Shown: piece by piece, positions 196 to 39,008 of the stretch
Numbering within the stretch: position 1 is the stretch's first letter
Layout of the letters: the number at the start of each line of letters is the position of its first letter
IMG/VR virus record: IMGVR_UViG_3300031952_000001
Location: 1 to 64,000 of that record
Strand: one strand, 5' to 3'
DNA length: 64,000 bases
Notes under the pieces: model-generated
What the model was told of the DNA's origin: nothing
What the model saw: only the letters and a program-made list of their open reading frames with translations
Database searches by the model: none
Position numbers and translations under genes: made by a program

Positions 196-227
196 TTTAA
201 AAAATCGAAGTCGTTTCGTGGTACTCT
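196..227 (+). promoter_or_regulatory. Putative phage late promoter, copy 1 (TTTAAAAAATC-N15-TACTCT)
   Basis: Intergenic; same 11-mer and identical 15-nt spacing to a TAnnCT box as at 7878-7909. Confidence 0.6.
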
Positions 228-264
228 GAGACAGACGGGACTCGTCTACTTTGCGAGGTGATTC

Positions 265-720
265 ATGGGTAGAATGCGGCATAGGGTGGTCGAGGTCGAG
301 CTGGCGGACGGAGAAGAAATCCGCATCACGGATGCTCCCAACAGCGACCCCTTGAGGAACCTGACCATCACGGTGGCCCCTCTGTACGACGGGCCCCTCG
401 TTCCCGCTGGCGGCGGCAACGTCGTGTGCAAGATCTTCTACGGGGGAGGCTACGCCCAGCCGGCCGCGGTGTTCGGGCCGAACTACGAGACGGGCGTCCA
501 GCAGGGCGGTGTCGTGAATCTCGCGTCCGGATCCGCCCTTCCGCGTCGGATCTACACGGACACGGGCATCTGCACTCCGGACCGGTGGAGGGACGGCACC
601 ACGGTTCGCGAGGATGCGAACCTCGCGAGGGCGCTGCACCTGTACAACAACACGGGCGGCGGTTTTACGTTCCGCTGCAAGGTCATGTTCGACTCCGAGG
701 AGCTGAACGAGGCCACCTAG
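265..720 (+). CDS. Hypothetical protein (151 aa, beta-rich)
   Basis: ORF with GAGGTG RBS and host-like codon usage. Confidence 0.75.
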   Translation: MGRMRHRVVEVELADGEEIRITDAPNSDPLRNLTITVAPLYDGPLVPAGGGNVVCKIFYGGGYAQPAAVFGPNYETGVQQGGVVNLASGSALPRRIYTDTGICTPDRWRDGTTVREDANLARALHLYNNTGGGFTFRCKVMFDSEELNEAT

Positions 721-731
721 AGGAGGACCCC

Positions 732-1115
732 ATGCAAGAGTTTCTCGACATCCTGGTTCAGTACGGTCCGTACATCGGGCTCGCGGTCATCGTCGCCGGA
801 ATCGTGCAGTCCTTGAAGCTCGCCTTCAAGAAGTTCTTCACGCAGACCACCGTGGGGATGCGGCTGATGCCCTTCATTCCGTTGGTGCTCGGCATGGTCG
901 GCGGGCTCGTTCTCCCGCAGGAGACCCTCGCGTCGAAGCTGATGGTGGGTGGTGCCTTGGGGACGATGTCGTCGGTGATCTACAACGTCATCACGCGCAC
1001 GTTCGCGAGAGGGACCACCCTCCAGCAGAAGATCGATACGAAGATCGGCAACGGGGCGTCCACTTCGGTAGAGCCTATGGAGCCCCCAGCAGGCCCTGAG
1101 GGCGAAGTGAAATGA
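732..1115 (+). CDS. Holin-like membrane protein (127 aa)
   Basis: AGGAGG RBS before ATG 732; about three hydrophobic helices and a charged C-terminal tail; precedes a spanin-like pair. Confidence 0.6.
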   Translation: MQEFLDILVQYGPYIGLAVIVAGIVQSLKLAFKKFFTQTTVGMRLMPFIPLVLGMVGGLVLPQETLASKLMVGGALGTMSSVIYNVITRTFARGTTLQQKIDTKIGNGASTSVEPMEPPAGPEGEVK

Positions 1116-1477
1116 AGACCCTGGGGAAGATCTGGGCGTGGGTGAAAGCCCACTGGAAGTGGGCCGTCGCCGGCCTGGCGGTGGTCGTCGCGCTCATCGT
1201 GGGTGCGCGCATCGCGAAGGGGCAGGTAGGCCCTCCGCCCATCCCGGAGAAGACCCAGAAGCGCAAGGAGAAGGTCGCCTTCTTGCAGGGTGAGATCAGC
1301 CAGCTCGAAGGTCAGAAGACCGGCATCAAGGCGAAGGAGACCGCGGCCGAGGGCGAGATCGAGGACCTCACCAACCAGGTCACGGAGCTGGACGGGAAGA
1401 TCGCTGTTGCCCGAGCAGAGGTCCCAACACTCTCTGCCGAGGAGAAGCTGAAGCGGTTCAAGGAGCTGGGGTACTGA
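1112..1477 (+). CDS. i-spanin-like protein (N-terminal TM helix + coiled coil)
   Basis: WKWAVAGLAVVVALIVGA TM segment followed by heptad coiled coil; ATGA overlap with the holin. Confidence 0.5.
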   Translation: MKTLGKIWAWVKAHWKWAVAGLAVVVALIVGARIAKGQVGPPPIPEKTQKRKEKVAFLQGEISQLEGQKTGIKAKETAAEGEIEDLTNQVTELDGKIAVARAEVPTLSAEEKLKRFKELGY

Positions 1478-1926
1478 TGCGGTGGTTCATTCTCACGATC
1501 TTCGTGGTCCTCCTGGCGGCGCTGCCGGCGCACGCGCAGGACAGCGGCAGCGTCGTCCTCGTGAACAAGGGTGTGACCGGCTTCTGGTTCCCTGAGCCTG
1601 TCGCGACGAAGATGCTCCAGGACCTCGCAGAGCTTCCGCTGCTCCGGACGAAGGTTGCTGCGCTGGAGCTGAAGGTCTCTCGGATGGAGGATCTGAATCT
1701 GCTGATGAAGGACGAGCGCTCTGTCACCGAGCAGATCAGCGCGAAGTGGAAGATGGCGTTCGACGAGCAGTTGAAGATCACGCAGGAGCAGCAGGCCTAC
1801 TACGAGGAGCAGCTCGCGCGTGAGAAGAAGTGGTACAAGTCGCCGGTCCTGTGGTTCAGCGTCGGGGTGATCGCAACGGCTGCGCTTGCCATCGGGCTGA
1901 ACTACGGACTCGCAAAGACACGATAG
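1477..1926 (+). CDS. Secreted coiled-coil protein with C-terminal TM anchor (spanin-partner-like)
   Basis: Signal peptide ending AHA|Q, coiled coil, C-terminal WYKSPVLWFSVGVIATAALAIG; no Cys; TGATG coupling. Confidence 0.5.
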   Translation: MRWFILTIFVVLLAALPAHAQDSGSVVLVNKGVTGFWFPEPVATKMLQDLAELPLLRTKVAALELKVSRMEDLNLLMKDERSVTEQISAKWKMAFDEQLKITQEQQAYYEEQLAREKKWYKSPVLWFSVGVIATAALAIGLNYGLAKTR

Positions 1927-1935
1927 GAGATTCCC

Positions 1936-2316
1936 ATGGCGGTTCTCAACATTCTCGGCAAGATGACGTTCCCGGGCTCGCCCAGCGGAGCGAACAACCC
2001 AGTGATGATCGGCGCTCCGACGGTGCCGGCTACCTCGACGACGGGGTTCTCGCTGAACTACAACGAGACCGCGCAGTTCGAGTACGTGGTTCCCGCGGCG
2101 GGCACGCGCGTGGTGAACTTCGGCTCCATCGCGACGGGGAAGTTCCTGTACATCGGCACGGACCAGCCGATCACGTACACGATGAACGGCGGCGTGGAGG
2201 TCTTCTCCTTGTCAGCCGGCGGCTTCCTGCTGATCGCAATGGGGAGCCTCTCTGCGCTGACGATCATCGCAGGGGCGCAGGAGGCCCGCGTCTTCGTGCT
2301 GGTGCTGGGAGACTAG
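1936..2316 (+). CDS. Putative small virion structural protein
   Basis: Beta-rich, Gly/Thr/Ala-rich 126 aa; GGAG RBS; sits in the structural cluster. Confidence 0.55.
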   Translation: MAVLNILGKMTFPGSPSGANNPVMIGAPTVPATSTTGFSLNYNETAQFEYVVPAAGTRVVNFGSIATGKFLYIGTDQPITYTMNGGVEVFSLSAGGFLLIAMGSLSALTIIAGAQEARVFVLVLGD

Positions 2317-2319
2317 ACC

Positions 2320-3228
2320 GTGATCATCCAGCCGGGAGTAGAGCAGCCTTCGGTTGCGAGCATGATCGAGCTTGCTCGGACGAACTCGGTTCGCCGGGTG
2401 GACATCGAGCTGCAAGACTCGACCGGGGCCCTTGTCGACATCGACGCCACCCCGGGACCCGGAGGGGAGCCGAACGGCGTTCTCGACCTGGAGATCACCG
2501 ACGTCGGCGGGATGTCGATCTACAAGGAGTCGTACTACCCCCCGACGCTAAGCGTGCTGGAGCCGAGGATCAAGAAGGCCGCTCCCGGCAGGTACTACAT
2601 CGATCTCGGCAAGGTTCCTCACGAGACGGACAACCCGCAGGCGCTGCTCTTCAACTGGCACTCTCGACAGTCCCTCCTTTCCGAGGAGGTCTACCGCACC
2701 CAGGTCGTCGAGGTGGTGTCTCCGAGGATCCTGTCCCTGCTCCCGTCTCTCCGGTTGCTGATCGACAAGACCGTCAAGCCGAACCTCCCGGAGAAATACT
2801 GCTTCATCGGATACACTGACGGGATGCTGATTCTTTTTCTCAAGATGGGTCTTTCAAAAATAAACGAGTACGAGCCGTACCCTGTCTGGGGGCACATCGA
2901 TCACTTCCCCATCGAGCTGTACTCGAACATCCTCCTGCGGGCTGCTCTGTTCCAAGGCATCACGAGCCAGACGCTCTTCTCCATCGATACGGACGTTCCG
3001 CAGTTCTCGGACTCCGGGCATAGTTTCGTCCTTCAGCACGCGACTCCGTTGGCGGCGTTCCTGGACCGACTGCGTGACGAGCTGGACAAGAGCGTGCCCA
3101 ACCTGAAGCGCAAATTCGTAAACAGCGGCACAATATCTATCGAGATGCGATGCGACCTTGCGTTCAGCATGATGCTTTCATCGGCTCCCTATGGATCTTT
3201 GTTCCGAAACCTTTGGGCTGCGATGTAA
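2320..3228 (+). CDS. Putative head-tail adaptor/neck protein
   Basis: 302 aa, N-terminal beta domain plus C-terminal helical domain; position upstream of neck and sheath genes; function inferred from synteny. Confidence 0.45.
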   Translation: MIIQPGVEQPSVASMIELARTNSVRRVDIELQDSTGALVDIDATPGPGGEPNGVLDLEITDVGGMSIYKESYYPPTLSVLEPRIKKAAPGRYYIDLGKVPHETDNPQALLFNWHSRQSLLSEEVYRTQVVEVVSPRILSLLPSLRLLIDKTVKPNLPEKYCFIGYTDGMLILFLKMGLSKINEYEPYPVWGHIDHFPIELYSNILLRAALFQGITSQTLFSIDTDVPQFSDSGHSFVLQHATPLAAFLDRLRDELDKSVPNLKRKFVNSGTISIEMRCDLAFSMMLSSAPYGSLFRNLWAAM

Positions 3229-3257
3229 TAGTTGTTCGATTGGTACTTATGGGTCTC

Positions 3258-3285
3258 TTGACATCGTTCTTTTGATGGTTACATT
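3258..3285 (+). promoter_or_regulatory. sigma70-type promoter upstream of HNH gene (TTGACA-N16-TACATT)
   Basis: Consensus -35 and near-consensus -10 in an AT-rich intergenic region. Confidence 0.5.
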
Positions 3286-3292
3286 AGAGGTC

Positions 3293-4192
3293 ATGGAAGA
3301 CGAACAGAAAAAAGACGACCTTCGAGTGTGCCGGAAGTGCGGGGAACCCAAGGACCTCTCCCAATTCGGAGTGAATCGGCGTACTCAAGACGGTATCCAG
3401 AATTTCTGCAAAACCTGCGTACAGGCCAAGAGCAAAAGGCAATATTACAATACCAATGCGGACAGGCCTCGCCGGTCTCCGAAGCTGAGCGATGAGGAGC
3501 TTTCTCGCAGAAATGCGGCTCGTGCGAAGCGCTGGCGTGAGGAAAAGGGTGAGGTTCTCAACGAGGAGCGGAGGGCCTACTACGAGGCGCACAAAGAAGA
3601 AGTGCGAGGGTCTCAGCAGCGCTACTATCTCCGGAACAAAGAATATTTCCAGGAGCGGAATAAAGAATGGCGTGAAGCTCACAAAGAAGAGCATCGGGAG
3701 AAAAATGCGGAATGGCGGGCTGCGCACCCAGGGTATCGATCTCCGGGAACGCAAGGAAAGACCCTGGAGGGTATAGATCCTGCGTTGAAACGCAACATGC
3801 AGTGCTCTCCGACTGAAAGAAAGAGACGGTACGCAAAGGTTGCTGCGAAGAGCGATCCTGCTACGCACTTGAGGGGTGTTCTGCGGGTTCGGATTAACCA
3901 TGCTCTGCGCTCAGGAAAGAAAACCGGCTCCGCCGTTCGTGATCTCGGCTGCACCGTTGAGGAGCTGAAGACGTACCTGGAGTCCAAGTTCCGCCCACAC
4001 CCGGAGACTGGCGAACTCATGACGTGGCAGAACCACACGACGGATGGCTGGCACATCGATCACATCGTGCCGTTGTCGAGCTTCGACTTGACCGATCCTG
4101 AACAGTTCCGGAAGGCGTGCCACTACACGAATCTCCAGCCGCTCTGGTGGCATGAGAACCTTCAGAAGAGCGCGAAGGTCGAGGCCGCCTGA
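3293..4192 (+). CDS. Freestanding HNH endonuclease with N-terminal CxxC zinc motifs
   Basis: CRKC...FCKTC; C-terminal GWHIDHIVPLS...CHYTNLQPLWWHENLQK HNH motif; start could also be ATG 3275. Confidence 0.85.
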   Translation: MEDEQKKDDLRVCRKCGEPKDLSQFGVNRRTQDGIQNFCKTCVQAKSKRQYYNTNADRPRRSPKLSDEELSRRNAARAKRWREEKGEVLNEERRAYYEAHKEEVRGSQQRYYLRNKEYFQERNKEWREAHKEEHREKNAEWRAAHPGYRSPGTQGKTLEGIDPALKRNMQCSPTERKRRYAKVAAKSDPATHLRGVLRVRINHALRSGKKTGSAVRDLGCTVEELKTYLESKFRPHPETGELMTWQNHTTDGWHIDHIVPLSSFDLTDPEQFRKACHYTNLQPLWWHENLQKSAKVEAA

Positions 4193-4446
4193 TGGAAAAA
4201 GAATTGGTATGCGATTTGTTCGACGAATCCGCGCCCGAGAACGAATCCTTGGCGCGTCTCGTCGATGACGGTCTGTGGCAGGAGCTGATCTCCAAGGCCG
4301 AGAGGATCGAGCCGCCGAAGGTTCTCGAAGAGGACAGGGGCTTCGCGATGGATGGATCTCAGAGGAAGGAGCCTTCCGCCGGCCAGGAAGAGGATGCCGC
4401 AGATCCTCTCGCGGCGCTCGTCCAAGAGCTGATCGAGGGCGTGTAG
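4192..4446 (+). CDS. Small acidic hypothetical protein
   Basis: TGATG overlap with the HNH stop; fills the gap to the next gene. Confidence 0.6.
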   Translation: MEKELVCDLFDESAPENESLARLVDDGLWQELISKAERIEPPKVLEEDRGFAMDGSQRKEPSAGQEEDAADPLAALVQELIEGV

Positions 4447-4447
4447 C

Positions 4448-5476
4448 ATGGTTGAGACCACACAGCGCGGCTGCAAGGTCCCGGGCTCCAACATGGCCGT
4501 CGGCTACTGGGGCCGGGACATCCACGCGCAAGTCTTCGCCGAGCAGCAGCTGGGCAAAGAGCGCGCGTTGCTCCAGGAGCAGATCCTCCTCGGCGGCCTC
4601 CGCATGGAGTTGTGGCAGGAGGCCCCTGCCGGGCCCGTGTGCGCCTGCTACAACACGATCAACCTGATGGCGGACCGGAAGTGCATGGCCTGCCACGGGG
4701 TCGGCAGGGTGCCCGGGTACCTGAAGTTCGGGTACAACACGCTGTGGATGTCGGCCTCGGACCCGGACAACATGCTCACGGACCTCCGCCTCACCCGGAA
4801 CTACCAGTCCTCGAAGCTGGAGTTGGTCGACGGTGCGCTCGTGGGGACCGTCGAGAGTGCTGACAAGCCCTTCTCCAGGACGGTGTTCGGGGCTACGTGG
4901 GGTACAAGTGTCCAGTGCTACCTGATGGAGTCGGACTACTCCTCCATCACGGTGGAATACTCGCTCGACGCTGGGGTGATCTGGGCGGCGCTGTCGAACC
5001 TGCCGGCGGAGGTTGCGCAGACGGGCATGATCCGCTTCCGGGCGACCCTGACCCGTACCGAGACCGCGGCGCGCTCGCCGTTGTTCGAGATGCTCAGTGC
5101 GCGGTACGCGACGATCCCTCTGGCGAATCCCGACGTGAACGGCGTGTACCGGAAGGGTCCTTGGATCCTCATCATGCGCGAGCCTCCGTCGACCGGTCAC
5201 CGCAAGCAGGACTACGGCGACCAGCCCATCGAAGAGGGCTTGGAGATGTGGACCGCGGGGTTGTCGATGTTCGACGCTGCGATCCCGGCCGGGAGCATGG
5301 GCGAGGTGATCAAGGGGCCTGAGGTCCTGATGCAGCTCCTCGACGGTGCTCGCGTGGGCAACAGGTACATGGCGACGGCTTGGAAAAACTCGGACCCGAT
5401 GGCGTACATCCTTGTGTCGCAGACGTTCAAGATGCGCATCACCGATGACGTCGATCCGATGAAGTTGGTGTGGTAG
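4448..5476 (+). CDS. Neck/head-closure protein
   Basis: CACY...CMACHGVG cysteine motif like neck proteins of large myoviruses; upstream of the sheath. Confidence 0.6.
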   Translation: MVETTQRGCKVPGSNMAVGYWGRDIHAQVFAEQQLGKERALLQEQILLGGLRMELWQEAPAGPVCACYNTINLMADRKCMACHGVGRVPGYLKFGYNTLWMSASDPDNMLTDLRLTRNYQSSKLELVDGALVGTVESADKPFSRTVFGATWGTSVQCYLMESDYSSITVEYSLDAGVIWAALSNLPAEVAQTGMIRFRATLTRTETAARSPLFEMLSARYATIPLANPDVNGVYRKGPWILIMREPPSTGHRKQDYGDQPIEEGLEMWTAGLSMFDAAIPAGSMGEVIKGPEVLMQLLDGARVGNRYMATAWKNSDPMAYILVSQTFKMRITDDVDPMKLVW

Positions 5477-5485
5477 GAGAAGGTC

Positions 5486-5980
5486 ATGAAAAAAGGCATC
5501 ACCCCAGAGGCAGCTCAGCGACTGGAGGCGTTCCTTCAGAAGAGGGCGCAGCAAGGTTACAACCCGGAGGATTGGAGCCCGGCTGACTCCGTGGAGGACA
5601 TCCTCTCTGGTCCGGCGGGTGTGGCCCTTCTTCGAGCTTTTTCCACTCCCGTGGCATCCCTGGAGAACGACGTGATCGGGATTCTCGATAGTGCTTACGA
5701 TCTTTCCAACCAAGAGATTGAAGCAAGTCTCCAGAAGGGTATCGACGGGGCGGGCGCAGCCGTTTCCGCAGAAGGTTTTTCGATTCCAGATCCTGCGGTT
5801 TGGGAGGGGCTGAAGCAGGGTTACGCTGACATGTACAGCACTGTTCTTGGGGAGCTTCGACAAAAGATCTATGACGCTTTTGATAACGCGGCAGCCAATC
5901 TTGCGTATGCGTACCAAGATGCTGCCCTTCAGGAGTTCAAGAAGGCTGCCGCGGGCACGCCTGGGGGGATGGTACCATGA
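5486..5980 (+). CDS. Hypothetical helical protein
   Basis: GGAG RBS; ORF fills the space between neighbours. Confidence 0.65.
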   Translation: MKKGITPEAAQRLEAFLQKRAQQGYNPEDWSPADSVEDILSGPAGVALLRAFSTPVASLENDVIGILDSAYDLSNQEIEASLQKGIDGAGAAVSAEGFSIPDPAVWEGLKQGYADMYSTVLGELRQKIYDAFDNAAANLAYAYQDAALQEFKKAAAGTPGGMVP

Positions 5981-6687
5981 GACGCAACGCTGGCGGGATC
6001 ACGGACGATGGCTTCAGCCGGCTCGCGTCTTTCGTGCAGGCCAAGGAAGAGGACAAGCCCGAGGAGGAGAAGGACTCGGACGAGGGTGGATCGGACAAGG
6101 ACATCAAGCAGGAGCTGGTCGAGTTCCTCAAGGACAATCCGAACCCCGAGGACGAGCTGGTCCACGAGTGGGCCGAGGAGAACGGCTACGAGGTGGACGA
6201 CATCGAGGCCCTCCTGTACGAGCTTGCCACGGACTACGTGGAGTCGAACGATCCGGACTCGGAGGACCTGATCCCCGGCGGCAAGGCCGACGATGTTCCC
6301 GACGAGGACCTCCCGATGGAGCAGATCCTGAAGGGGATCAAGGTCGAGATGGAGCACACGGACGACCCGGACCTCGCGAAGGAAATCGCGTCCGATCATA
6401 TTGAAGAATTTCCGGATGGGGATTACTACGACGCTCTGGCGGACATGGAAGACGAGCTGAAGAAGGAAGGCCGGCTCCCGGGCTGGCCGTCCTCGAAGCC
6501 TTCCGGCTGGGGCTGGCGCGAGGAGATCGCCCCTCCTCGGTGGACCCCCGAGATGGAGAGAGCGGAGGAACCCGACCCACGCGAAGGGTTTGGATCCTGT
6601 CCTGGATGCGGTCAGGATGTTCCTGATCTCCCGGAGGGGGAGCTGTGCGACGTGTGTGACCGTAAGACTCGGAACATGCAGGAGTAG
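5977..6687 (+). CDS. Acidic protein with DUF5661-like motif
   Basis: GIKVEMEHTDDPDLAKEIASDHIEEFPDGDYYDALADME resembles the G-x-x-VE-x-EH...DH...YY-x-x-L-x-x-ME motif (from memory); C-terminal CxxC/CxxC. Confidence 0.55.
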   Translation: MRRNAGGITDDGFSRLASFVQAKEEDKPEEEKDSDEGGSDKDIKQELVEFLKDNPNPEDELVHEWAEENGYEVDDIEALLYELATDYVESNDPDSEDLIPGGKADDVPDEDLPMEQILKGIKVEMEHTDDPDLAKEIASDHIEEFPDGDYYDALADMEDELKKEGRLPGWPSSKPSGWGWREEIAPPRWTPEMERAEEPDPREGFGSCPGCGQDVPDLPEGELCDVCDRKTRNMQE

Positions 6688-6690
6688 CCC

Positions 6691-7854
6691 GTGCCGCAGA
6701 ACGACTTCTCAGGACCGCGCGAGTACCGTGGGACCATCCCACGGGACCCCCGCAACCCGCCGCGTTTCGGTCAGCTGATCGAGACGGTGAAGGACGCCTT
6801 CGCCGCGGAGCTGTACCGGTTCTTCGAGTCCAAGTCGGACGACATCCGGGCGAAGCTGGGCGAGTTCCCTGCCATCGAGAAGTTCGCTATCGGTGCCGGC
6901 AGCACCTCGTCGAGCATGGAAACCGTGATGAACCTCATCATGTCCTACGGGAACACCCTGGACAAGTACCCGATGATCGCCATCACCTCCGCCAACGACA
7001 AGGAGTTCGTCCTCGGGCTGGGATCGACCATCGTTTGCGACGGGCAGCAGGCTCCGCGGCTGACAGGTGGCGAGGGCCCCTTCAACCTTCAGGATGGCTG
7101 GACGCTCAGGATCCGGACGTGGCCTCTCGGCCTTGATGGCGATCCGGTGGAGTCGACCTACGAGTTCAAGGACTTCCTGTTCCCGGACATCGCCAACGCC
7201 ACGGTGCAGGACGTCATCCAAGCCATCAACGCGCAGGCGCTGTACACCCAGGCTCGGGAGTCTGGTAACGGGTTTCTCCAGATCGTTTCTGGAGGTCCTT
7301 GCGCTTCGGGGGCGAAGAACGGTCTGGAGATCATCGGAGGCACGCCTGACTGCCTCCTGGCGCTCGGCTACTCCGAGGGGCAGATCGACCTGTACACCGA
7401 CCACACGTCAGGCTCAGCGTCCCCTGTGCAGCGCTACGGCGTGGCCGGGAAGATGACGATCAACTTGGACGTGATCTCTGACGACATGAACACGAGGACT
7501 CAGCTCGCGGATCTCGTGAGAGCTTTTTTCACCTTCTACGTGGATCGCCAGTATTTTCAGTTCCAAGGGCGGTCGTACCTGGACGATTCGATAGACCCTC
7601 CTGAATGGTACCAGATCGTGCTGGACCGGAAGTTCTCGTGGGCCGGCGAGTACCAGCGGGCCCGCCAGGGCGGTGAGCAGAAGTCCTACCTGTACTCGAT
7701 CCGGGGTGCTGTTCCGGTCTTTGCGGCGGACTTCATCGACCGTCAGGTGAACCGCGGTACCGCAACATTTGTCCAGTCCCAGGGTCTCATCCACAAGGAA
7801 GATTTTCCCACGGGAGACTACTTCGGGGTCAATTACCTGAAGCTCGGCCAGTAG
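6691..7854 (+). CDS. Putative tail completion/terminator protein
   Basis: 387 aa immediately upstream of the sheath; contains an inserted beta domain also seen in the sheath. Confidence 0.5.
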   Translation: MPQNDFSGPREYRGTIPRDPRNPPRFGQLIETVKDAFAAELYRFFESKSDDIRAKLGEFPAIEKFAIGAGSTSSSMETVMNLIMSYGNTLDKYPMIAITSANDKEFVLGLGSTIVCDGQQAPRLTGGEGPFNLQDGWTLRIRTWPLGLDGDPVESTYEFKDFLFPDIANATVQDVIQAINAQALYTQARESGNGFLQIVSGGPCASGAKNGLEIIGGTPDCLLALGYSEGQIDLYTDHTSGSASPVQRYGVAGKMTINLDVISDDMNTRTQLADLVRAFFTFYVDRQYFQFQGRSYLDDSIDPPEWYQIVLDRKFSWAGEYQRARQGGEQKSYLYSIRGAVPVFAADFIDRQVNRGTATFVQSQGLIHKEDFPTGDYFGVNYLKLGQ

Positions 7855-7877
7855 GCTCTCCAGTCCTTCGACTTCGT

Positions 7878-7909
7878 TTTAAAAAATCCGACAGCTCCCA
7901 CGGTATACT
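7878..7909 (+). promoter_or_regulatory. Putative phage late promoter, copy 2 (TTTAAAAAATC-N15-TATACT)
   Basis: Intergenic, directly upstream of the sheath; matches 196-227 in motif and spacing, both with GG before the -10 box. Confidence 0.6.
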
Positions 7910-7956: not shown

Positions 7957-10461
7957 ATGGCAATCAGCATTTCGAAATATGTCGATCCAGGCGTGTACAT
8001 CGCGGAAGTGATTGTCCCTGGTGCGATTTCCGTCACTTCTGAGCGCACGCTGGGGATCATCGCCATCGCTCCGCGCACCCGTCGCAGTGTGGATGAGCCG
8101 GTCACCCGCGGGAAGATCTACGCGGAGGTGCTGACTCTGTCCGTGGGGTCTCCCCATGTGGGGACCTTGGCGAACACCTCGAACAGGTCCAGGAACAACG
8201 CGCAGCTGTACATGAACGGGAACCCCTTGGGGCTCGCGGACTGGCAGTTCCTGGCTGCGCGCCTGGTGGGCACCGAGTGGGCTGGCGCGACGGTGGACGT
8301 CTCCCTGGCGACCGGTACCCCCTACTTCACCCTGTCCCTCGACGGGAAGCGCGCCGTCACTCTGAACTTCGATGCCCTGGTGCCGCTGGTTGGCGGTGTT
8401 CAGGCGGTCGCGACTCCGACGGACATCTGCAACGCCATCAACTACGCCCTGGCGAATGCGCTCGGGCCGTTCTTCTCGATCTACGGCCTGACCTACGCCG
8501 CGGTGGCGACCCACGCGGTGGGCCTGGTGAATGAGATCATCACCCTCACGTCGCCCTCGACGGAGCCCACTTCCGATCTGAAGGTGTTCATCTCCCCGAA
8601 CGCGGCGCTCGACGGTGCGTCCACGATCTCGACCGCTGCGTGGACTCCCGCGGTGGGCGCGGGTGTTCAAGCCACCACACGTCTCCAGGTGTTCGACGCG
8701 GCGTACACATCGTCCGCGGTCTACACCTTGGACTACGTGTCGGTCGACGTGCTGGTCGATGCGCTGGACAATGCCGGCACCTCTACCCCGCTGTCGGACA
8801 TCAACTACCTCGGTTCGTACCCGGGCGGTGTGGACTACACGAAGAACACGGACTACGAAGTCGGCATCGCCAACGATGTCGACTGGGACGTGACTACCTG
8901 GGTGCAGGCGACGGCGACCACGTTGGATTTCGTCGCCTTCCCGCCGACCATCGTGGCGGCCACCAACGACAAGCTCCTGATGTCCATCAACAACCGCACC
9001 CAGGTCCTCGTGACCTTGACCCCGGGCGCTCCGACGACTCCGGCGATTGTGGCCGCGGACATCAACGCCGCGCTGGCCTCGATTGCGAGTGCGTACGGCC
9101 CGGAGTTCTCGCACATGGCGGTCGTCGTGGGCAACACGGTGCGGATCCGGTGCCCGGACGACTTCGAGAACTACCTCCCGGAGAAGGGTGTCGCCAGCTC
9201 GATTCAGTTCCGGGCGACCGCTGCGAACGCCTTCACGACGCTGTTCGGCGCGATCACGCTGCCCTACACGGCCCAGGGCACCGGGAAGCGACCGGCGTTC
9301 GGGACGAACTACTACTGCACGTACGACTACGTCCGCCCGGCCACGGACTACACGACGGGACACCGTGTGTACGATCCGGATCAGCTCTACCAGTACACGA
9401 CCAAGCTGACGATGCAGAACTACCTGGTCAACAAGCTCTGCGTGGCGGGGGAGATCGCGTTCGAGAACGGCATCTCCTCGATGTACCTCTTCCAGATCAA
9501 CGACTCGGTGGCCCCCGGCACCCCGACGCAGCTGGAGATCAACACCGCGCTCGACGCCGCGAAGGAGTATTCGACCGTCACGGACGTCGTCACCATCGAC
9601 ACGAGCCTGGACACCGCGGTGTACCAGATGCTCCACGTCGCGGATCAGTCGTCGATGCTCGAAAAGCACTACCGCCGCGGCTGGTTCAGCATGGCACGGA
9701 ACACGGACGTCGGTGATCCCGACACGCCGGACACGTTCGTCTACCGGTCGACCAAGACCTTGCAGCCGGGCAACACCTCCCCGGGCCGCGGCCGGCTGTT
9801 CCTGATCGCTCCGGGCAACGCGACCAGAACCATCAAGCTCGACACGAGCCAAGAGATCGATCTCAACGTGGACGGCACGTACATCGCCGTCGCCGTCGCG
9901 TCGGTGTTCACCGCCCTCCCGAGCCCCTCGTCGGCGCTCATCGGGCGCTTCATCACGGGCTTCAAGACCGAGGGCTTCGGGACGTACCTCCGCGGCGAGC
10001 GCCACACGCTGGCGGACAAGGGCGTTCTCGTGGTCACGCTCGACGCCGGCCGCCTGGTCATGCTCGACCCGATCTCCACCGAGGCCGGCGGTGCCAAGGT
10101 GGTGCAGTTCGAGGAGCCGGCCTCCAGCGCGCAGAAGGACGCGGTCACGAAGACCGTCGACACCCTGCTCGCGGGCAACGTCATCGGTGTGGTTCCGGAC
10201 GATCTGAGCGACTTCATTTCGGACTGCAAGAAGTGGATCTTGCTCGGCATCACGGCGAACATCACCAATGGCTCGATTGCGGCCTACCGCGACCAGTCGG
10301 GGCTGCCGCGTGACATCGACGCTACGACGGACATCGTGGTGTACCAGTCTACGACTGATCCCAGGACCTTCTACTTCAAGTATTGGTACAACCTGAAGTA
10401 CCCGGCCAAGAGGTTCTTCGGTGAATACTCGGTCGACAACCCGTTCTTCAGCCCCGCCTAG
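7957..10461 (+). CDS. Contractile tail sheath protein (834 aa)
   Basis: N-terminal YVDPGVY motif typical of sheaths; C-terminal sheath-like domain (...RTFYFKYWYNLKYPAKRF); followed by tube genes. Confidence 0.9.
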   Translation: MAISISKYVDPGVYIAEVIVPGAISVTSERTLGIIAIAPRTRRSVDEPVTRGKIYAEVLTLSVGSPHVGTLANTSNRSRNNAQLYMNGNPLGLADWQFLAARLVGTEWAGATVDVSLATGTPYFTLSLDGKRAVTLNFDALVPLVGGVQAVATPTDICNAINYALANALGPFFSIYGLTYAAVATHAVGLVNEIITLTSPSTEPTSDLKVFISPNAALDGASTISTAAWTPAVGAGVQATTRLQVFDAAYTSSAVYTLDYVSVDVLVDALDNAGTSTPLSDINYLGSYPGGVDYTKNTDYEVGIANDVDWDVTTWVQATATTLDFVAFPPTIVAATNDKLLMSINNRTQVLVTLTPGAPTTPAIVAADINAALASIASAYGPEFSHMAVVVGNTVRIRCPDDFENYLPEKGVASSIQFRATAANAFTTLFGAITLPYTAQGTGKRPAFGTNYYCTYDYVRPATDYTTGHRVYDPDQLYQYTTKLTMQNYLVNKLCVAGEIAFENGISSMYLFQINDSVAPGTPTQLEINTALDAAKEYSTVTDVVTIDTSLDTAVYQMLHVADQSSMLEKHYRRGWFSMARNTDVGDPDTPDTFVYRSTKTLQPGNTSPGRGRLFLIAPGNATRTIKLDTSQEIDLNVDGTYIAVAVASVFTALPSPSSALIGRFITGFKTEGFGTYLRGERHTLADKGVLVVTLDAGRLVMLDPISTEAGGAKVVQFEEPASSAQKDAVTKTVDTLLAGNVIGVVPDDLSDFISDCKKWILLGITANITNGSIAAYRDQSGLPRDIDATTDIVVYQSTTDPRTFYFKYWYNLKYPAKRFFGEYSVDNPFFSPA

Positions 10462-10486: not shown

Positions 10487-10933
10487 ATGCAAGTCCCGTA
10501 CACAGGAATTCGTACTAGCCATGCGATCTCCATCCGCGTGGGCAGCACGACCATCGGCCAGATCCAGACCTGGGCTCCGACCCAGTCGAGGACCATCACG
10601 CCGGCCTACGAGCTGCGCTCCGAGACTTCCGGAGAGGTGACTGAGAACATTCCCGGGAACGTCACGGGCCTGACGATCCAGGTGAGCCGCTACGACTTGT
10701 TCACCGCCAAGATGGAGCAGGTCTGGGGCACCTCGAAGGCGCTGTGGATGCTTTCGAATCAGAATATCCCCCTCACGGTCGAGGAGAAGTGGCGCAATCC
10801 GAACATGATCGTCGAGAAGTTCGTCTACGAGGGCTGCTGGTTCTCTCAGCTCGGGCGCAACATGCAGGCGCAGGGTGACAGGATCGTCCTCGTCAACGCC
10901 ACCCTCGCCTACGTCAAGTGCCGCCCGTACTAG
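10487..10933 (+). CDS. Tail tube protein, paralog 1
   Basis: 148 aa right after the sheath; IGQIQTW...YEGCWFSQLGR tube-like pattern; GGAGGA RBS. Confidence 0.8.
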   Translation: MQVPYTGIRTSHAISIRVGSTTIGQIQTWAPTQSRTITPAYELRSETSGEVTENIPGNVTGLTIQVSRYDLFTAKMEQVWGTSKALWMLSNQNIPLTVEEKWRNPNMIVEKFVYEGCWFSQLGRNMQAQGDRIVLVNATLAYVKCRPY

Positions 10934-10939: not shown

Positions 10940-11545
10940 ATGCCTGTACCGCGTACTGATCTCCGAACAAGTCACGCCATAACGCTTCGTGCAGCGGATA
11001 AGACGATAGGGCGGATCCAGAGCTGGGGTCCTTCGCAGGGCCGGGACGTCAAGCTCAAGTTCGAGATCAATGCGGTCGGTACCGGAGCCCCTATAGAGGC
11101 CGTCCCCGGCATTGCGACTTCCCAGGTTATTCAGGTGGCTCGCTACGATCTCTACGTTCAGAAAATGGAGGAGATCTGGGGTATGCCGAGGCCTCTGTGG
11201 GCCCTGACAGACCAGCACAACCCCATCGACATCGAAGAGAAGTGGATCAAGTTTGGAACGAAAGAAAAACCACTGATTCCGGGCATGGAGACTGTCACAA
11301 CTTCCTCCTTGCTGGATAAGGTCGGGTCGACGAAGTTCGGAAAAGCACTGGGGATCGGAACCGCGAACGAGCTGGGAGGCATAGACATCGGACCTGCCGG
11401 CGCTGGTCAGGAAATAACGGTTGAGAAGAACTGGTATTCGGGATGCTGGTTCACGAGCATGGGCCGTGTGATGCAGGCACAAGGAGACCGTTTAGTGCTC
11501 GTAAACGCCACTTTGGTGTATGTGAAGATGCGACGTTTGATGTAG
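10940..11545 (+). CDS. Tail tube protein, paralog 2 (with ~50-aa insertion)
   Basis: Colinear with paralog 1 (RTSHAI, IGRIQSW, YDL..KMEE.WG, QAQGDR.VLVNATL). Confidence 0.8.
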   Translation: MPVPRTDLRTSHAITLRAADKTIGRIQSWGPSQGRDVKLKFEINAVGTGAPIEAVPGIATSQVIQVARYDLYVQKMEEIWGMPRPLWALTDQHNPIDIEEKWIKFGTKEKPLIPGMETVTTSSLLDKVGSTKFGKALGIGTANELGGIDIGPAGAGQEITVEKNWYSGCWFTSMGRVMQAQGDRLVLVNATLVYVKMRRLM

Positions 11546-11600
11546 AGTTCGTCATCGACAAAACACCCCGGAAACCCCGGGAGAAGGGAGCGAAAGCGCC

Positions 11601-12131
11601 ATGTCGAACGAAACGACCAACCCCAAGAGAATATTGGACGATCTCGCGAGGGAACTCGACGGAGACTGCCTGGAGGACACCTTCACCTGGAAGGGCCGGA
11701 AGTTCAAGATCAAGCTCTTGAACGAGGAGGAGTCGAACTGGAGGAACGGGTTCGTGAACATGGGTAGTGGGTTCTCGACCATCACGTCGTGGCGGCTGCC
11801 TACCCTCGCCATCGGAATCCGGGAGATCGACGACGTCCCTGTGTTCGAGTTCTTCCGCTCCGAGTGGGAGGCGACCGAGAAGGGCCGGGAGGTCGTGCGT
11901 CTCATGGAAGGTCGCGGCACCTTCAGCATGAAGTATTTCTCTGCTGAGCACCTCATGCAGTACCTGGGGCGGCGTCCTCCCGAGGCTCTGGAGGAGATGT
12001 GGAAATACTACAAGATGCTGGAGGACCGTCGTGAGGAGGCCCAAGACAACGTAAAAAAATCCTCAGGGGAGGGTTCGGAGAAGGCCGAGAGGCCGAGTGG
12101 GACCGAATCTTCCCCGTCTGGAGAAGAGTAG
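11601..12131 (+). CDS. Tail assembly chaperone (G-like, short form)
   Basis: Between tube and tape-measure genes; contains a slippery site near its 3' end. Confidence 0.75.
   Translation: MSNETTNPKRILDDLARELDGDCLEDTFTWKGRKFKIKLLNEEESNWRNGFVNMGSGFSTITSWRLPTLAIGIREIDDVPVFEFFRSEWEATEKGREVVRLMEGRGTFSMKYFSAEHLMQYLGRRPPEALEEMWKYYKMLEDRREEAQDNVKKSSGEGSEKAERPSGTESSPSGEE
12053..12115 (+). promoter_or_regulatory. -1 programmed ribosomal frameshift signal (A AAA AAA + 13-bp stem)
   Basis: Heptamer 12053-12059, 6-nt spacer, GGGGAGGGTTCGG (12066-78) pairs with CCGAATCTTCCCC (12103-15); the -1 frame is open from 12035 to 12880. Confidence 0.85.
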
Positions 12132-12880
12132 TCTCCCGGTTCAAGATCAAAGCGAAGATCTTGACTCGGCGGATGATGTGTCTTGGCGACCCCCGGCTGA
12201 AGGGGATGAACGACACCCAGTGGGTGTTCGAGCTGGAGGCCATGAATCTTCAGGACAAGGAGAAGTATGACGACCTGCGCATGCTCTCCGACATCACGAA
12301 GAAGCAGATCATCTCCATGCTGGGGCTGAATCTGCTTCCCGTGGAGGACGAGAAGACTGGCCTGCTTCGTCAGCCCGAAGAGCACGAGTGCCTGCCCCTC
12401 GCCATCATGATCGGCAGGGACGACATCCTGGCGGCCATCAAAGAGCGCCAGGAGCAGTACGGCACTCAGGAAGAGGTTCGCGCACAGCTTGAGTCTTCTG
12501 ATGCGCTCATGGGATCCGGAAAGGCGGAAGATACGGGTGTTGTGGAGATGAGTCCTGACGAGCTGGAGGAGTTCATGAAGGATGAGGGGGACGTCGAGTT
12601 CGAGAACGCCCCTGAAGATCTCCGCAAGGCCATGAAGTGGGGCGGGCGCGATACCCAGATGCTCTTGGAGAACCTCGTGCTGTCCAAAGACGATCTTGGA
12701 GATGATCCTCTGGAGGATCTACCGGCAAGGACTTTGGGGAGGGCCCGTTCGGACATCAAGGATTCCCTGAAGACACGTCCAGTAGTCAGTGGCATCGAAG
12801 TCGAGGAGGTAGAGTTAAGGTCTACGAAGGGCCTTGAGGTAAAATCAGATCGACCTGTGGTGACGTTGGACATCGAGTGA
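12059..12880 (+). CDS. Tail assembly chaperone frameshift extension (T part of a ~426-aa GT-like fusion)
   Basis: -1 frame reads ILRGGFGEGREAEWDRIFPVWRRVVSRFKIKAKILTRRMM... with GC3-rich codons and continues into ORF 12161-12880. Confidence 0.8.
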   Translation: MLRGGFGEGREAEWDRIFPVWRRVVSRFKIKAKILTRRMMCLGDPRLKGMNDTQWVFELEAMNLQDKEKYDDLRMLSDITKKQIISMLGLNLLPVEDEKTGLLRQPEEHECLPLAIMIGRDDILAAIKERQEQYGTQEEVRAQLESSDALMGSGKAEDTGVVEMSPDELEEFMKDEGDVEFENAPEDLRKAMKWGGRDTQMLLENLVLSKDDLGDDPLEDLPARTLGRARSDIKDSLKTRPVVSGIEVEEVELRSTKGLEVKSDRPVVTLDIE

Positions 12881-12884
12881 GGGA

Positions 12885-15218: not shown

Positions 15219-15224
15219 TTTTAG

Positions 15225-20365: not shown

Positions 20366-20431
20366 AATTGTTTAGGGGATATTGGATCTATTGTAGTGCA
20401 AAAAAAGTTCTAGAAGAAAAAGGTTTGAAAC

Positions 20432-21187
20432 ATGCCTACATTTTTGGAAAATATGAAGCAGGCTTTCGGTCCCAGCAACGGGATGCCGGTGCCTACAGTA
20501 GAGCGGATTCTCGACCGCATTCTGAACCCGTACGAAGATGTTGCGTACCGAGTGCCGTTCATCTTCACTTCGGATCAGAGGATCAAGGACGCGATCCCTC
20601 CAGTGCGGATGAAGATGAATCCGGAGACCGTGACGTTCTCGCAGAACAAGAGGATCACGCGGCGTGATACGCAGTCCGGTGCGGTCTTCTTCCACTGGAC
20701 GAACGCCAAGGGGCAGAACAACGATGTCATCAACATCAGCTTCGCCGGCTCCACGGGGAACATCAACCTGAGGACCGGGGCCCAGCGCAACAGCAAGATT
20801 GCGTCCGACCAGATAAAGAGGTTCCGAGACTGGATGAAGTCCGCTACGAAGCAGGAAGGTCTCGACGTGGAGACGCTGGCGGGTGCGTCTAAGCTCGTGA
20901 ATTTCTGGAATCTCTACAACCTGACCGTGGAGCCGGTGATCGATCCATTCAAAGGCTACCAGAACAAGTTCTACTTCATGTACTCCAGCCCGATCCTTGG
21001 AAACGCCTTGATTCAGTTCATCGGCCATTTCGACAAGGTCTTGGAGTTCACGGACGACGCGGCCAACCCGTTCAACAAGAACTACTCCTTCAGCTTCGTG
21101 GCGACGGAGACGATTCCGTCCATGGATGCCATCTTCAGGTACATCTCTCAGGCCTTGGGTACTCAGTTCTTCAATGAGTTGGAGTAG
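20432..21187 (+). CDS. Baseplate tube-initiator/hub-like protein
   Basis: MKMNPETVTFSQNKRITRRDT...HW...INISFAGSTG pattern typical of post-tape-measure tube-fold proteins. Confidence 0.6.
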   Translation: MPTFLENMKQAFGPSNGMPVPTVERILDRILNPYEDVAYRVPFIFTSDQRIKDAIPPVRMKMNPETVTFSQNKRITRRDTQSGAVFFHWTNAKGQNNDVINISFAGSTGNINLRTGAQRNSKIASDQIKRFRDWMKSATKQEGLDVETLAGASKLVNFWNLYNLTVEPVIDPFKGYQNKFYFMYSSPILGNALIQFIGHFDKVLEFTDDAANPFNKNYSFSFVATETIPSMDAIFRYISQALGTQFFNELE

Positions 21188-21189
21188 CT

Positions 21190-23661: not shown

Positions 23662-23670
23662 GGTGCTTCA

Positions 23671-25140: not shown

Positions 25141-25147
25141 GTGGAAC

Positions 25148-25648: not shown

Positions 25649-25649
25649 G

Positions 25650-26084: not shown

Positions 26085-26087
26085 CGC

Positions 26088-27518: not shown

Positions 27519-27529
27519 AGGGCGGTGTT

Positions 27530-28528: not shown

Positions 28529-28529
28529 A

Positions 28530-38399: not shown

Positions 38400-38428
38400 T
38401 TGACATCCCGATCCTCCTTTGCTATATA
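38400..38428 (+). promoter_or_regulatory. sigma70 promoter (TTGACA-N17-TATATA, TG-extended -10)
   Basis: Consensus spacing in the intergenic region; followed by inverted repeat GATCTC-N6-GAGATC (38439-38456). Confidence 0.7.
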
Positions 38429-38467
38429 GTACATGTTGGATCTCCATAGTGAGATCAGGAGGACCCG

Positions 38468-38926: not shown

Positions 38927-38936
38927 TTTTTCCCTC

Positions 38937-38964: not shown

Positions 38965-39008
38965 ACTGGTTGCCAGGAGGGATCTGGCTGAACAAAGGGA
39001 GGTTCGAG

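What the first reader, a model, noticed from the sequence alone, without database searches (positions are those of the whole stretch)
196..7909. A non-sigma70 promoter motif (TTTAAAAAATC-N15-TAnnCT) heads two virion operons
Seen: the same 11-mer occurs at 196-206 and 7878-7888. In both cases it is intergenic and followed after exactly 15 nt (ending GG) by TACTCT or TATACT. In contrast, genes after 38.4 kb have canonical TTGACA promoters. Inference: a phage-specific late promoter class, possibly read by the sigma-like protein at 51604. Only two copies were found by eye.
Basis: partly seen in the sequence, partly recalled or inferred. Interest (0 to 1): 0.6.

Follow-up and report, generated by a model that had tools for sequence, protein, structure and literature searches.

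The report
Phage late promoters with A/T-rich box
The two look-alike sequences belong to a conserved family of at least 13 phage-specific promoters that sit in front of the virion genes of an uncultivated 212-kb phage, and a very divergent sigma factor encoded by the phage itself probably reads them; this is a well-known way for phages to time their late genes, seen here in a new sequence version.

Summary
The window is the first 64 kb of a 211,982-bp IMG/VR phage record. The motif TTTAAAAAATC-N15-TAnnCT at 196 and 7878 is real.

Genome-wide there are about 13 independent sites of TTTA(A/G)AAATC(C)-N14-17-TAtAcT. All are intergenic and all point the same way as the next gene. Their -10 ends 20-72 nt before a start codon. 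Most lie in the virion module (tail sheath, terminase, major head protein operons).

A syntenic relative at about 45-70% protein identity keeps box and -10 in front of the orthologous genes, while spacers and flanks have diverged. About 47 other promoters in the genome are a uniform host-type class, TTGACA-N16-TACATT, mostly before small early genes.

The ORF at 51604 has no Pfam hit. Protein-language-model neighbours, a pLDDT 90 model, structure searches and a family profile hit to SigA region 4 all indicate a two-domain sigma-70-family protein. It is translationally coupled to the primase-like gene.

Best reading: late promoters read by host core RNA polymerase carrying this phage sigma. The promoter class is about 0.9 likely; the sigma link is inferred, at about 0.55. 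No start-site data could be obtained. It is a new member of a known kind, of moderate interest.

The parts
196..227 (+). Late-type promoter 1: box TTTAAAAAATC (196-206), 15-nt spacer, -10 TACTCT (222-227). It lies 38 nt before the ATG at 265.
   Evidence: An orthologous site lies before the orthologue in relative G001 and in relatives with 78-98% major head protein identity.
265..7854 (+). First late operon: about 12 tightly packed ORFs (265-720 through 6691-7854) between the head genes and the sheath gene. Their functions are unknown.
   Evidence: ORF lists. Pfam and PHROGs give no hits. Synteny with G001 is kept.
3258..3285 (+). Host-type promoter TTGACA-N16-TACATT embedded in the first late operon, before ORF 3293-4192, in a lower-GC stretch.
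7878..7909 (+). Late-type promoter 2: box TTTAAAAAATC (7878-7888), 15-nt spacer, -10 TATACT (7904-7909). It lies 48 nt before the ATG at 7957.
   Evidence: Alignment A1 with seven relatives shows box and -10 kept while spacer and flanks diverge.
7957..10461 (+). Tail sheath gene (834 aa), first gene of the second late operon.
   Evidence: tblastn to the annotated tail sheath of Bacillus phage G: 27% identity over residues 483-793, E 2e-9. Orthologues have 68-95% identity in relatives.
10487..10933 (+). Tail-tube-like virion protein (148 aa), directly after the sheath gene.
   Evidence: phrog_985 virion structural protein, E 2.8e-6.
10940..32598 (+). Rest of the tail and baseplate operon, including the baseplate wedge gene 26088-27518. 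No further late-type promoter was found in it until 32412.
   Evidence: phrog_6 baseplate wedge, E 1.6e-25; promoter scan.
32412..32442 (+). Late-type promoter 3, with a weaker box: TTTAGGAATCC, 14-nt spacer, -10 TACATT. It precedes a low-GC 336-aa ORF (32620-33630) and the 1582-aa beta-helix, fibre-like gene (33641-38389).
   Evidence: The orthologous site in G001 lies directly before the 1582-aa orthologue. NosD beta-helix hit.
38400..39561 (+). Three host-type promoters (38400-38430, 38937-38964, 39532-39561) at the start of the replication module.
51604..52365 (+). Gene for a 253-aa divergent sigma-70-family protein. It has a sigma-2-like helical domain carrying a beta insertion, a linker, and a sigma-4-like helix-turn-helix. 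Its TTG start overlaps the stop of the primase-like gene 50669-51607.
   Evidence: A syntenic orthologue exists in G001.

Best explanation
The two sites are members of a phage-specific late promoter class. Each has an 11-bp A/T-rich box (consensus TTTA-A/G-AAATC-C), which would span about -38 to -28 if transcription starts about 7 nt after the -10. In place of a TTGACA -35 element, this box sits 25-26 nt (from its first T) upstream of a sigma-70-family-type -10, TAtAcT.

Proposed sequence of events:
1. Early in infection, the host holoenzyme uses the roughly 47 TTGACA-N16-TACATT promoters.
2. Those at 38.4-39.6 kb drive the replication module, which contains the divergent sigma gene at 51604.
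3. The sigma protein then binds host core RNA polymerase. Its sigma-4-like domain reads the box and its sigma-2-like domain reads the -10.
4. This switches on about 13 late promoters in front of the tail sheath, terminase, head and other virion operons.

**Shown by computation:** the motif class, its placement, its conservation, and the sigma-like fold.
For: **Motif is non-random and strand-specific.** 8 forward, 0 reverse and 0 control matches genome-wide. Above PWM score 14 there are 33 overlapping windows on + against 2 on -, and 1 and 0 in the two reversed controls.

**Placement.** All 12-13 independent sites are intergenic and co-directional, with the -10 ending 20-72 nt before a start codon. 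The chance of 12 out of 12 being intergenic is about 4e-13.

**Unbiased check.** 7-mer enrichment in upstream regions returns only two families: TTGACA/TGGTTACATT, and TTAAAAA/TTTAAAA/AAAAATC at 14-28 fold.

**Geometry.** The distance from TTTA to the -10 is 25 or 26 nt in 21 of 22 sites in two genomes.

**Downstream genes.** They include the tail sheath, the terminase large subunit operon and the major head protein operon, and the fibre-like gene.

**Conservation.**
- In G001 (sheath 68% identical), 9 of 10 pattern sites and one further PWM site precede orthologues of the G000 genes. One of these orthologues has moved to a different place in the genome and kept its site.
- Alignment A1 shows box and -10 conserved in otherwise diverged spacers.
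- Relatives with 78-98% major head protein identity keep both sites that flank the head gene.

**Sigma-like protein.**
- All ten best named language-model neighbours are sigma-70/ECF clusters, at score 0.96-0.97.
- In the pLDDT 89.6 model, residues 1-140 align to sigma domain 2 and residues 166-241 to sigma domain 4. About 30 of the top 50 chains among 48,161 PDB representatives are sigma factors, with Z 6.4-8.3.
- A family profile hits SigA regions 3.2-4 at E 5e-4.
- One family member hits Pfam Sigma70_r2 at E 5e-5.
- The gene is conserved at the same place in G001.
- It overlaps the primase-like gene's stop, so it is expressed with the replication genes.

**No alternative machinery detected.** No MotA, AsiA or T7-type polymerase was found.

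**Distant relative.** Rctr197k carries a related box (TTTAGGACC) but a downstream element that is not TAnnnT. This is hard to reconcile with a host primary sigma.
Against: - There is no transcript evidence: no RNA run was listed, and the host is unknown.
- The -10 (TAnnnT) is equally what a host primary sigma reads.
- The box contains TTAAAA, a 4-of-6 match to TTGACA at an 18-19 nt spacer, so weak recognition by the host holoenzyme is not excluded.
- All evidence for the sigma fold is individually weak: no Pfam hit, Foldseek E only 3e-3, and Z about 8, which is a level the tool warns is common for helical proteins.
- The sigma orthologue in G001 is only about 23% identical, while the promoter consensus barely changes. 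That is not the tight co-variation one might expect.
- No homologue of the sigma was detected in Rctr197k, though that record is partial and poorly assembled.
- Three sites (74241, 96336, 98115) precede genes of unknown function or a TnpB gene, not recognisable virion genes.
- The gene calls are from my own crude caller.
Confidence: 0.55

Rival explanations
1. The sites are late or middle promoters, but the host primary-sigma holoenzyme reads them with help from a phage activator that binds the box. This would resemble sigma appropriation by T4 MotA and AsiA, or activation by Mu Mor and C. The 51604 protein would then have another role.
For: - The -10 is of the same TAnnnT type as in the early class.
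- The box replaces the -35 at about the position of a MotA box.
- An 11-bp conserved box is longer than a usual -35 element.
- The phage encodes helix-turn-helix proteins behind early promoters, for example the triple-HTH protein at 158853 with a weak Mor hit.
Against: - No MotA or AsiA domain was detected.
- The 158853 protein has no orthologue in G001, which keeps the promoter class.
- A conserved sigma-like gene is present at the syntenic place in both genomes.
- The box is not a dyad, unlike Mor and C sites.
Confidence: 0.2
2. The sites are ordinary host-holoenzyme promoters of a second flavour: a weak -35 TTAAAA at an 18-19 nt spacer, with an A-tract acting like a proximal UP element. No phage factor would be needed, and timing would be set by something else.
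For: - There is a 4-of-6 match to TTGACA at spacers of 18-19 nt in most sites.
- 4 of 12 sites have TGn directly before the -10 (read from the site sequences).
- A/T-rich upstream DNA generally favours polymerase binding (established knowledge).
Against: - The two classes are sharply separate, with no intermediates. The early class is extremely uniform at a 16-nt spacer.
- Conservation extends over ATCC, which lies outside any TTGACA-like hexamer.
- The box is kept across relatives although the genome is about 60% GC.
- The generic sigma-70 scan does not pick up either site.
- The sites are nearly confined to the structural module.
- Rctr197k pairs the related box with a downstream element that is not TAnnnT.
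Confidence: 0.12
3. The sites are not promoters. They could be a repeated DNA or RNA signal of another kind, such as a binding site for a packaging, replication or nucleoid protein, or an RNA processing site.
For: Only sequence evidence is available. A/T-rich boxes in a GC-rich genome can serve many DNA-binding proteins.
Against: - The box always comes with a TAnnnT hexamer at a fixed 25-26 nt distance.
- It is always on the coding strand and always shortly upstream of a start codon.
- The pair travels with its gene when gene order changes between relatives.
- No consistent hairpin or T-run that would mark a terminator was seen at the two window sites.
Confidence: 0.05

Closest known systems
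Middle and late promoters of Bacillus phage SPO1, read by phage sigma factors gp28 and gp33/gp34, and the phiEco32 / phage 7-11 gp36 sigma system (PMC4331800; PMC13401047)
   Same: Host-type early promoters are followed by a second promoter class with its own -35 and -10 consensus in front of later genes. A small phage-encoded sigma-70-family protein redirects host core polymerase to this class.
   Different: - The consensus sequences differ (from memory, SPO1 middle promoters are AGGAGA / TTTnTTT).
- Here the -10 stays TAnnnT-like, and only the upstream element is new.
- The sigma here has no detectable sequence match to those proteins and carries a beta insertion in domain 2.
- Nothing here has been tested experimentally.
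T4 middle promoters (MotA box plus a sigma-70 -10; sigma appropriation by MotA and AsiA)
   Same: A host-like -10 is combined with a phage-specific box that replaces the -35 element at roughly -30 to -38.
   Different: - No MotA or AsiA homologue was found.
- From memory, the MotA box is TGCTTtA, about 12 nt from the -10. Here the box ends 14-17 nt from the -10.
- A sigma-like gene is available here as an alternative reader.
T4 late promoters (TATAAATA, read by gp55 and gp33 with the sliding clamp)
   Same: A phage-encoded sigma-like factor made together with the replication genes turns on virion genes.
   Different: T4 late promoters have no upstream element at all. Here an 11-bp upstream box is the most conserved part, and the protein has a sigma-4-like domain that gp55 lacks (established knowledge).
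Sigma factor genes of the jumbo phage group containing Pseudomonas phage PaBG and Lu11, and Mieseafarmvirus (PMC7412058)
   Same: This is a distantly related head lineage: the major head protein hits Lu11 and Erwinia jumbo phages at 25-27% identity. Those phages also carry sigma genes so divergent that only profile methods recognise them, and a fused 5'-3' exonuclease and UDG next to polymerase genes.
   Different: That paper describes no cognate promoter motif. I found no sequence link between their sigma and the 51604 protein.
Virus Rctr197k (KX853510.1), the closest GenBank record
   Same: Its major head protein is 60% identical and its sheath 37%. It has 4 forward and 0 reverse copies of a related box, TTTAGGACC, including one before its sheath gene.
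   Different: Its downstream element is TCTTATCC after 17 nt, not TAnnnT. No homologue of the 51604 protein was detected, but the record is partial.

Membership tests
Housekeeping sigma-70 / sigma-A promoter (TTGACA-N16-18-TATAAT) | -10 hexamer with T at position 1, A at position 2 and T at position 6 | tested here: met
   All 22 sites in G000 and G001 have TAnnnT; the consensus is TATACT.
Housekeeping sigma-70 / sigma-A promoter (TTGACA-N16-18-TATAAT) | -35 hexamer close to TTGACA at a 16-18 nt spacer | tested here: not met
   The best match is 3-4 of 6 (TTAAAA or TAGAAA), mostly at 18-19 nt. The generic scan misses both window sites. The genome's real TTGACA class is uniform at 16 nt.
Phage late promoter class served by a phage-encoded sigma-70-family factor | A consensus of its own, distinct from the host-type promoters of the same genome | tested here: met
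   Two separate families emerge from unbiased 7-mer enrichment and from the pattern scans.
Phage late promoter class served by a phage-encoded sigma-70-family factor | Sites sit in front of virion and morphogenesis genes | tested here: met
   They precede the sheath, the terminase and major head protein operons, the baseplate operon and the fibre-like gene. Three sites precede genes of unknown function or a TnpB gene.
Phage late promoter class served by a phage-encoded sigma-70-family factor | The phage encodes a sigma factor | tested here: inconclusive
   Pfam gives no hit. Four weaker lines agree on a sigma-2 plus sigma-4 protein.
Phage late promoter class served by a phage-encoded sigma-70-family factor | Initiation at the sites depends on that sigma and occurs late | not testable with these tools
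   No RNA run was listed. The host is unknown and the phage uncultivated.
Sigma-70 protein family (for the 51604 product) | Region 2 domain (core binding, -10 recognition) | tested here: inconclusive
   P0001 has no Pfam Sigma70_r2 hit; one of 76 family members hits it at E 5e-5. Model residues 1-140 align to sigma domain 2 of SigE, SigK, sigma-70, RpoS and Taq SigA at Z 6.6-7.9. A conserved aromatic cluster is present: Y67, Y72, Y74, Y79.
Sigma-70 protein family (for the 51604 product) | Region 4 helix-turn-helix (-35 recognition) | tested here: met
   The family profile hits SigA regions 3.2-4 at E 5.4e-4. Model residues 166-241 align to sigma-4 of F. nucleatum SigH (Z 8.3), E. coli SigE on -35 DNA (Z 7.7) and SigD4 (Z 7.4).
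T4-type sigma appropriation (MotA/AsiA) | MotA and AsiA homologues present | tested here: not met
   PF09114 and PF09010 give no match at E <= 1 in six frames. Remote analogues cannot be excluded.
UP element (alpha-CTD site) | A/T-rich element located at about -40 to -60, upstream of a -35 hexamer | tested here: not met
   The box spans about -38 to -28 relative to the inferred start, so it occupies the -35 position itself.
Phage-encoded RNA polymerase promoters (T7-type) | A single-subunit polymerase gene in the genome | tested here: inconclusive
   PF00940 gives no match, but the control genomes did not ring either. The 1353-aa and 1009-aa proteins have no Pfam or PHROGs hit.

The most novel reading that the evidence does not exclude
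The 51604 protein would represent an unannotated, fast-evolving branch of the sigma-70 family, with these features:
- at least 80 clusters at 50% identity in metagenomes, almost all without a Pfam hit;
- a small beta-barrel-like insertion inside domain 2;
- an unusually long 11-bp A/T-rich upstream box, read about 19-20 bp from a TAnnnT -10.

On this reading, box and -10 co-evolve with the sigma across a large clade of environmental 160-210-kb phages, and the Rctr197k variant (TTTAGGACC-N17-TCTTATCC) is a second specificity.
Probability: 0.35. Interest if true: 0.55.

Novelty: new member of a known kind. Interest (0 to 1): 0.4.

Why it matters
It gives a ready transcription map for a large clade of uncultivated 160-210-kb phages: about 47 host-type early promoters, about 13 late promoters, and a candidate late sigma. 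At least 100 related contigs carry a major head protein relative; the 80 kept are 57-98% identical.

It also supplies a matched pair of promoter and candidate sigma that can be tested in vitro or in a heterologous reporter without knowing the host. If the pairing holds, it adds an orthogonal sigma/promoter pair and a sigma sub-family that current domain libraries miss.

It does not change the general picture of how phages time their genes.

Tried and rejected
- **Megablast of window 1-12000 against GenBank phages:** no match.
- **RNA evidence:** no RNA run was listed for window 1-10000.
- **Sequence searches with the 51604 protein:** no Pfam, PHROGs or PDB sequence match with the single protein or the 9-sequence profile. 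No Sigma70_r2, r4 or r4_2 match above cut-off anywhere in the genome. The two weak HTH matches (102449, 158892) are N-terminal HTHs of other proteins.
- **The triple-HTH protein at 158853 as box-binding activator:** rejected as the common factor, because G001 keeps the promoters but has no orthologue.
- **The search for related loci with the 291-aa protein of 167089:** found nothing. With the 224-aa and 302-aa proteins it found only close relatives.
- **The G000-type pattern in Rctr197k:** 0 hits. A related but different motif was then found by eye.
- **Relatives with 68% or lower major head protein identity (many AT-rich):** no recognisable box in the +/-5.5 kb around the head gene. The few matches are mostly on the wrong strand. 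The motif as defined is therefore confined to a subclade.
- **Homologues of the 51604 protein in GenBank phages:** none by tblastn. The helicase search did not list Rctr197k among its five displayed rows.
- **MotA, AsiA and T7-type polymerase domains:** none.
- **The large proteins after the 74241 site (1353 aa, 1009 aa):** no family hit, so their role, including any polymerase-like role, stays open.
- **Whole-chain Foldseek of both models:** only E about 3e-3. Domain-wise alignment was needed.
- **Known alternative-sigma consensus sequences** (sigma-28, sigma-B/F, sigma-H, sigma-54; compared from memory): none fits.
- and was re-sent without that item.

Full report
**What the window is.** The window is bases 1-64000 of a 211,982-bp IMG/VR virus record, rated 100% complete by CheckV. 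The record is 59.8% GC and almost all of its genes in the window are on the + strand. Record positions 1-1321 and 210615-211930 overlap at 88% identity. This is either an imperfect terminal repeat or a mixed-strain assembly. Either way, the motif copy at 210810 is the same site as 196.

**Checking the observation.** TTTAAAAAATC stands at 196-206 and 7878-7888. Each copy is followed by 15 nt ending GG and then TACTCT or TATACT, and both are intergenic.
- In the window, the 11-mer with up to one mismatch is found only at these two places, against 0.12 expected from shuffles.
- In the whole record it occurs 8 times forward, 0 times reverse, and 0 times when the pattern is read backwards as a control.
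- Every one of these copies is followed by a TAnnnT hexamer.

**The full family.** I used a relaxed pattern, and then a two-block weight matrix trained on 12 sites (so the training sites match by construction). Together they give these independent sites (genome coordinates of the box):
- 196, 7878, 74241, 96336, 98115, 167038, 169857, 180279, 183760, 189938, 190510, 204596;
- a weaker site at 32412;
- still weaker candidates at 157574 (minus strand), 165283 and 114912.

Above score 14 there are 33 overlapping windows on + against 2 on -, and 1 and 0 in the two reversed controls. All strong sites are intergenic under my crude gene calls, in which 9.2% of the genome is intergenic. The chance of 12 out of 12 being intergenic is about 4e-13. 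All point toward the next gene, and the -10 ends 20-72 nt before its start codon.

Unbiased 7-mer enrichment in upstream regions returns just two families: CTTGACA/TGGTTACATT, and TTAAAAA/TTTAAAA/AAAAATC.

The distance from the first T of TTTA to the -10 is 25 nt in 13 sites, 26 nt in 8 and 27 nt in 1, after correcting one -10 coordinate that I had entered one base off (site 169857). If transcription starts about 7 nt after the -10 (an assumption), the box covers about -38 to -28. That is the place of a -35 element, not of an UP element.

**The contrasting class.** About 47 intergenic promoters of the form cTTGACa-N16-TACATT (or TATAGT) stand before small genes. They lie on both strands at 115-132 kb, and at 38.4-39.6, 88.9-112 and 152-160 kb. 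In the window they are at 3258-3285, 38400-38430, 38937-38964 and 39532-39561. The late sites match TTGACA at only 3-4 of 6 positions, mostly at 18-19 nt spacers. The generic sigma-70 scan does not report them.

**What lies downstream.**
- **7878:** the 834-aa gene is a tail sheath (Bacillus phage G tail sheath, E 2e-9). It is followed by a tube-like protein and, further on, a baseplate wedge gene.
- **183760:** heads the operon containing the terminase large subunit gene.
- **204596:** heads the operon containing the major head protein gene.
- **32412:** heads a 1582-aa beta-helix protein.
- **196:** heads about 12 ORFs without any family hit. They lie between the head genes and the sheath gene.
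- **74241 and 98115:** precede unknown genes.
- **96336:** precedes a TnpB (IS605 OrfB) gene.

The structural module thus runs from about 165 kb, across the record's end, to 38 kb, and it holds most of the sites.

**Conservation.** Relatives were found through the sheath protein.
- In alignment A1, relatives with 68-73% sheath identity keep TTTARAATCC and TATACT, while the spacer and the flanks have diverged.
- I laid out the 192-kb relative G001. It carries 10 pattern sites on the coding strand against 1 on the other strand.
- Nine of those ten, plus one more found with the matrix, lie before orthologues of the G000 genes. The orthologue of the gene at 180374 sits elsewhere in that genome and has kept its site.
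- Contigs with 78-98% major head protein identity keep the two sites that flank the head gene.
- Contigs at 68% identity or lower show no such box.
- The nearest GenBank record is Virus Rctr197k (head protein 60% identical). It has four forward copies and no reverse copy of TTTAGGACC-N17-TCTTATCC, one of them before its sheath gene. The box is related, but the downstream element is not TAnnnT.

**The proposed reader.** The ORF at 51604-52365 starts at a TTG that overlaps the stop of the primase-like gene. It lies between the DnaB-like helicase and primase genes and the DNA polymerase A gene. Homologues conserve the N-terminus from that start.

Sequence searches with the single protein gave no Pfam, PHROGs or PDB hit. 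Other lines do point to a sigma factor:
- **Language-model neighbours.** They score 0.96-0.97 and are all sigma-70/ECF clusters.
- **Family size.** An exhaustive profile search found 80 cluster representatives of 105-352 aa.
- **Sequence links.** The 76-sequence profile hits SigA regions 3.2-4 at E 5.4e-4. One member hits Pfam Sigma70_r2 at E 5e-5.
- **Structure model.** With that alignment the model reaches pLDDT 89.6. It shows three helices, a five-strand beta insertion (residues 71-113), a fourth long helix, a flexible linker and a four-helix HTH domain.
- **Structure comparison.** Against 48,161 PDB representatives, about 30 of the best 50 chains are sigma factors. Residues 1-140 align to sigma domain 2 and residues 166-241 to sigma domain 4, at Z 6.4-8.3 (similar). 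These Z values are middling by the tool's own warning, and whole-chain Foldseek gives only E about 3e-3.

The case therefore rests on agreement among weak lines, not on one strong one. G001 has a 282-aa orthologue at the same position, also overlapping the primase-like gene, but only about 23% identical.

**Mechanism.** I take the sites to be late promoters (about 0.9). I take the 51604 protein, bound to host core polymerase, to be their most likely reader (about 0.55).
- **Host sigma plus an unidentified activator** is the main rival. MotA and AsiA domains are absent. The one early-expressed multi-HTH protein with a weak Mor hit is not conserved in G001.
- **Host holoenzyme alone** is less likely. 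The two classes are sharply separate, and conservation extends outside any TTGACA-like hexamer.
- **A non-promoter role** fits the fixed box-to-hexamer geometry and the placement poorly.

**Known relatives of the idea.** The scheme is that of SPO1, phiEco32 / phage 7-11 and, more loosely, T4 (from established knowledge; PMC4331800 and PMC13401047 are listed). The head lineage is distantly tied to PaBG, Lu11 and Erwinia jumbo phages. The PaBG paper reports sigma genes recognisable only by profile methods, and it describes no promoter motif (PMC7412058). I found no paper on this motif.

**Limits.**
- No RNA data were available, and the host is unknown.
- Gene calls come from my own simple caller.
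- The weight matrix was trained on the sites it scores.
- Comparisons with published consensus sequences of other sigma factors are from memory.

Noticed in passing
G000 101345-101713 (L011:3345-3713), outside the window: The phage encodes a tmRNA (Rfam RF00023, 82 bits; ARAGORN tag peptide of 21 residues). It lies next to tRNA-Met and tRNA-Pro in a lower-GC island.
   Followed up: partly
window 63477-64000, continuing to G000 65795: The RecA gene (772 aa) is split by an insert of about 500 aa. The RecA core matches residues 32-205 and RecA_C matches residues 712-764, which suggests an intein.
   Followed up: no
G000 96336-98140 (L010:16336-18140): A TnpB (IS605 OrfB) gene and a 174-aa ORF sit between two late-type promoters. 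The relative G001 has one promoter and no TnpB there, so the element appears to have landed just behind a late promoter.
   Followed up: partly
window 32620-33630: A low-GC 336-aa ORF (weak Stc1 zinc-finger hit) is inserted between late promoter 32412 and the 1582-aa fibre-like gene. It is absent at this place in G001.
   Followed up: partly
window 3258-3285 and ORF 3293-4192: A host-type TTGACA-N16-TACATT promoter and a 299-aa ORF without family hits sit inside the first late operon, in a lower-GC stretch. This may be an inserted, early-expressed gene.
   Followed up: no
window 1-1321 and G000 210615-211930: The two ends of the record overlap at only 88% identity, whereas close relatives are classed as having direct terminal repeats. 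This is either an imperfect repeat or an assembly of two strains.
   Followed up: partly
window 42237-43721: One protein fuses a 5'-3' exonuclease to a uracil-DNA glycosylase domain. This is the same unusual combination reported for the PaBG group.
   Followed up: no
G000 158853-159395 (L018:1462-2004): A 180-aa protein with three HTH repeats (HTH_28, Sigma70_r4 and weak Mor hits) stands behind an early TTGACT promoter. It has no orthologue in G001.
   Followed up: partly
G000 115.7-132 kb (L011, L012): Two divergent arrays of about 30 very small genes each have their own near-identical promoter and leader (TTGACA-N16-TACATT, then GGGG and a shared AACAACCGGGAGG-type ribosome site). This looks like a family of duplicated early gene cassettes.
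   Followed up: no
KX853510.1 at 31242, 55065, 71946, 143665 (L070, L072, L074, L077): Virus Rctr197k has four same-strand copies of TTTAGGACC-N17-TCTTATCC, one of them before its sheath gene. This is probably the cognate late promoter of that phage, with a different downstream element.
   Followed up: partly
P0001 residues 71-113 (window about 51814-51942): The sigma-like protein carries a confidently modelled five-strand beta insertion inside its domain 2. On its own this insertion matches small SH3/KOW-like barrels in the Foldseek lists.
   Followed up: no
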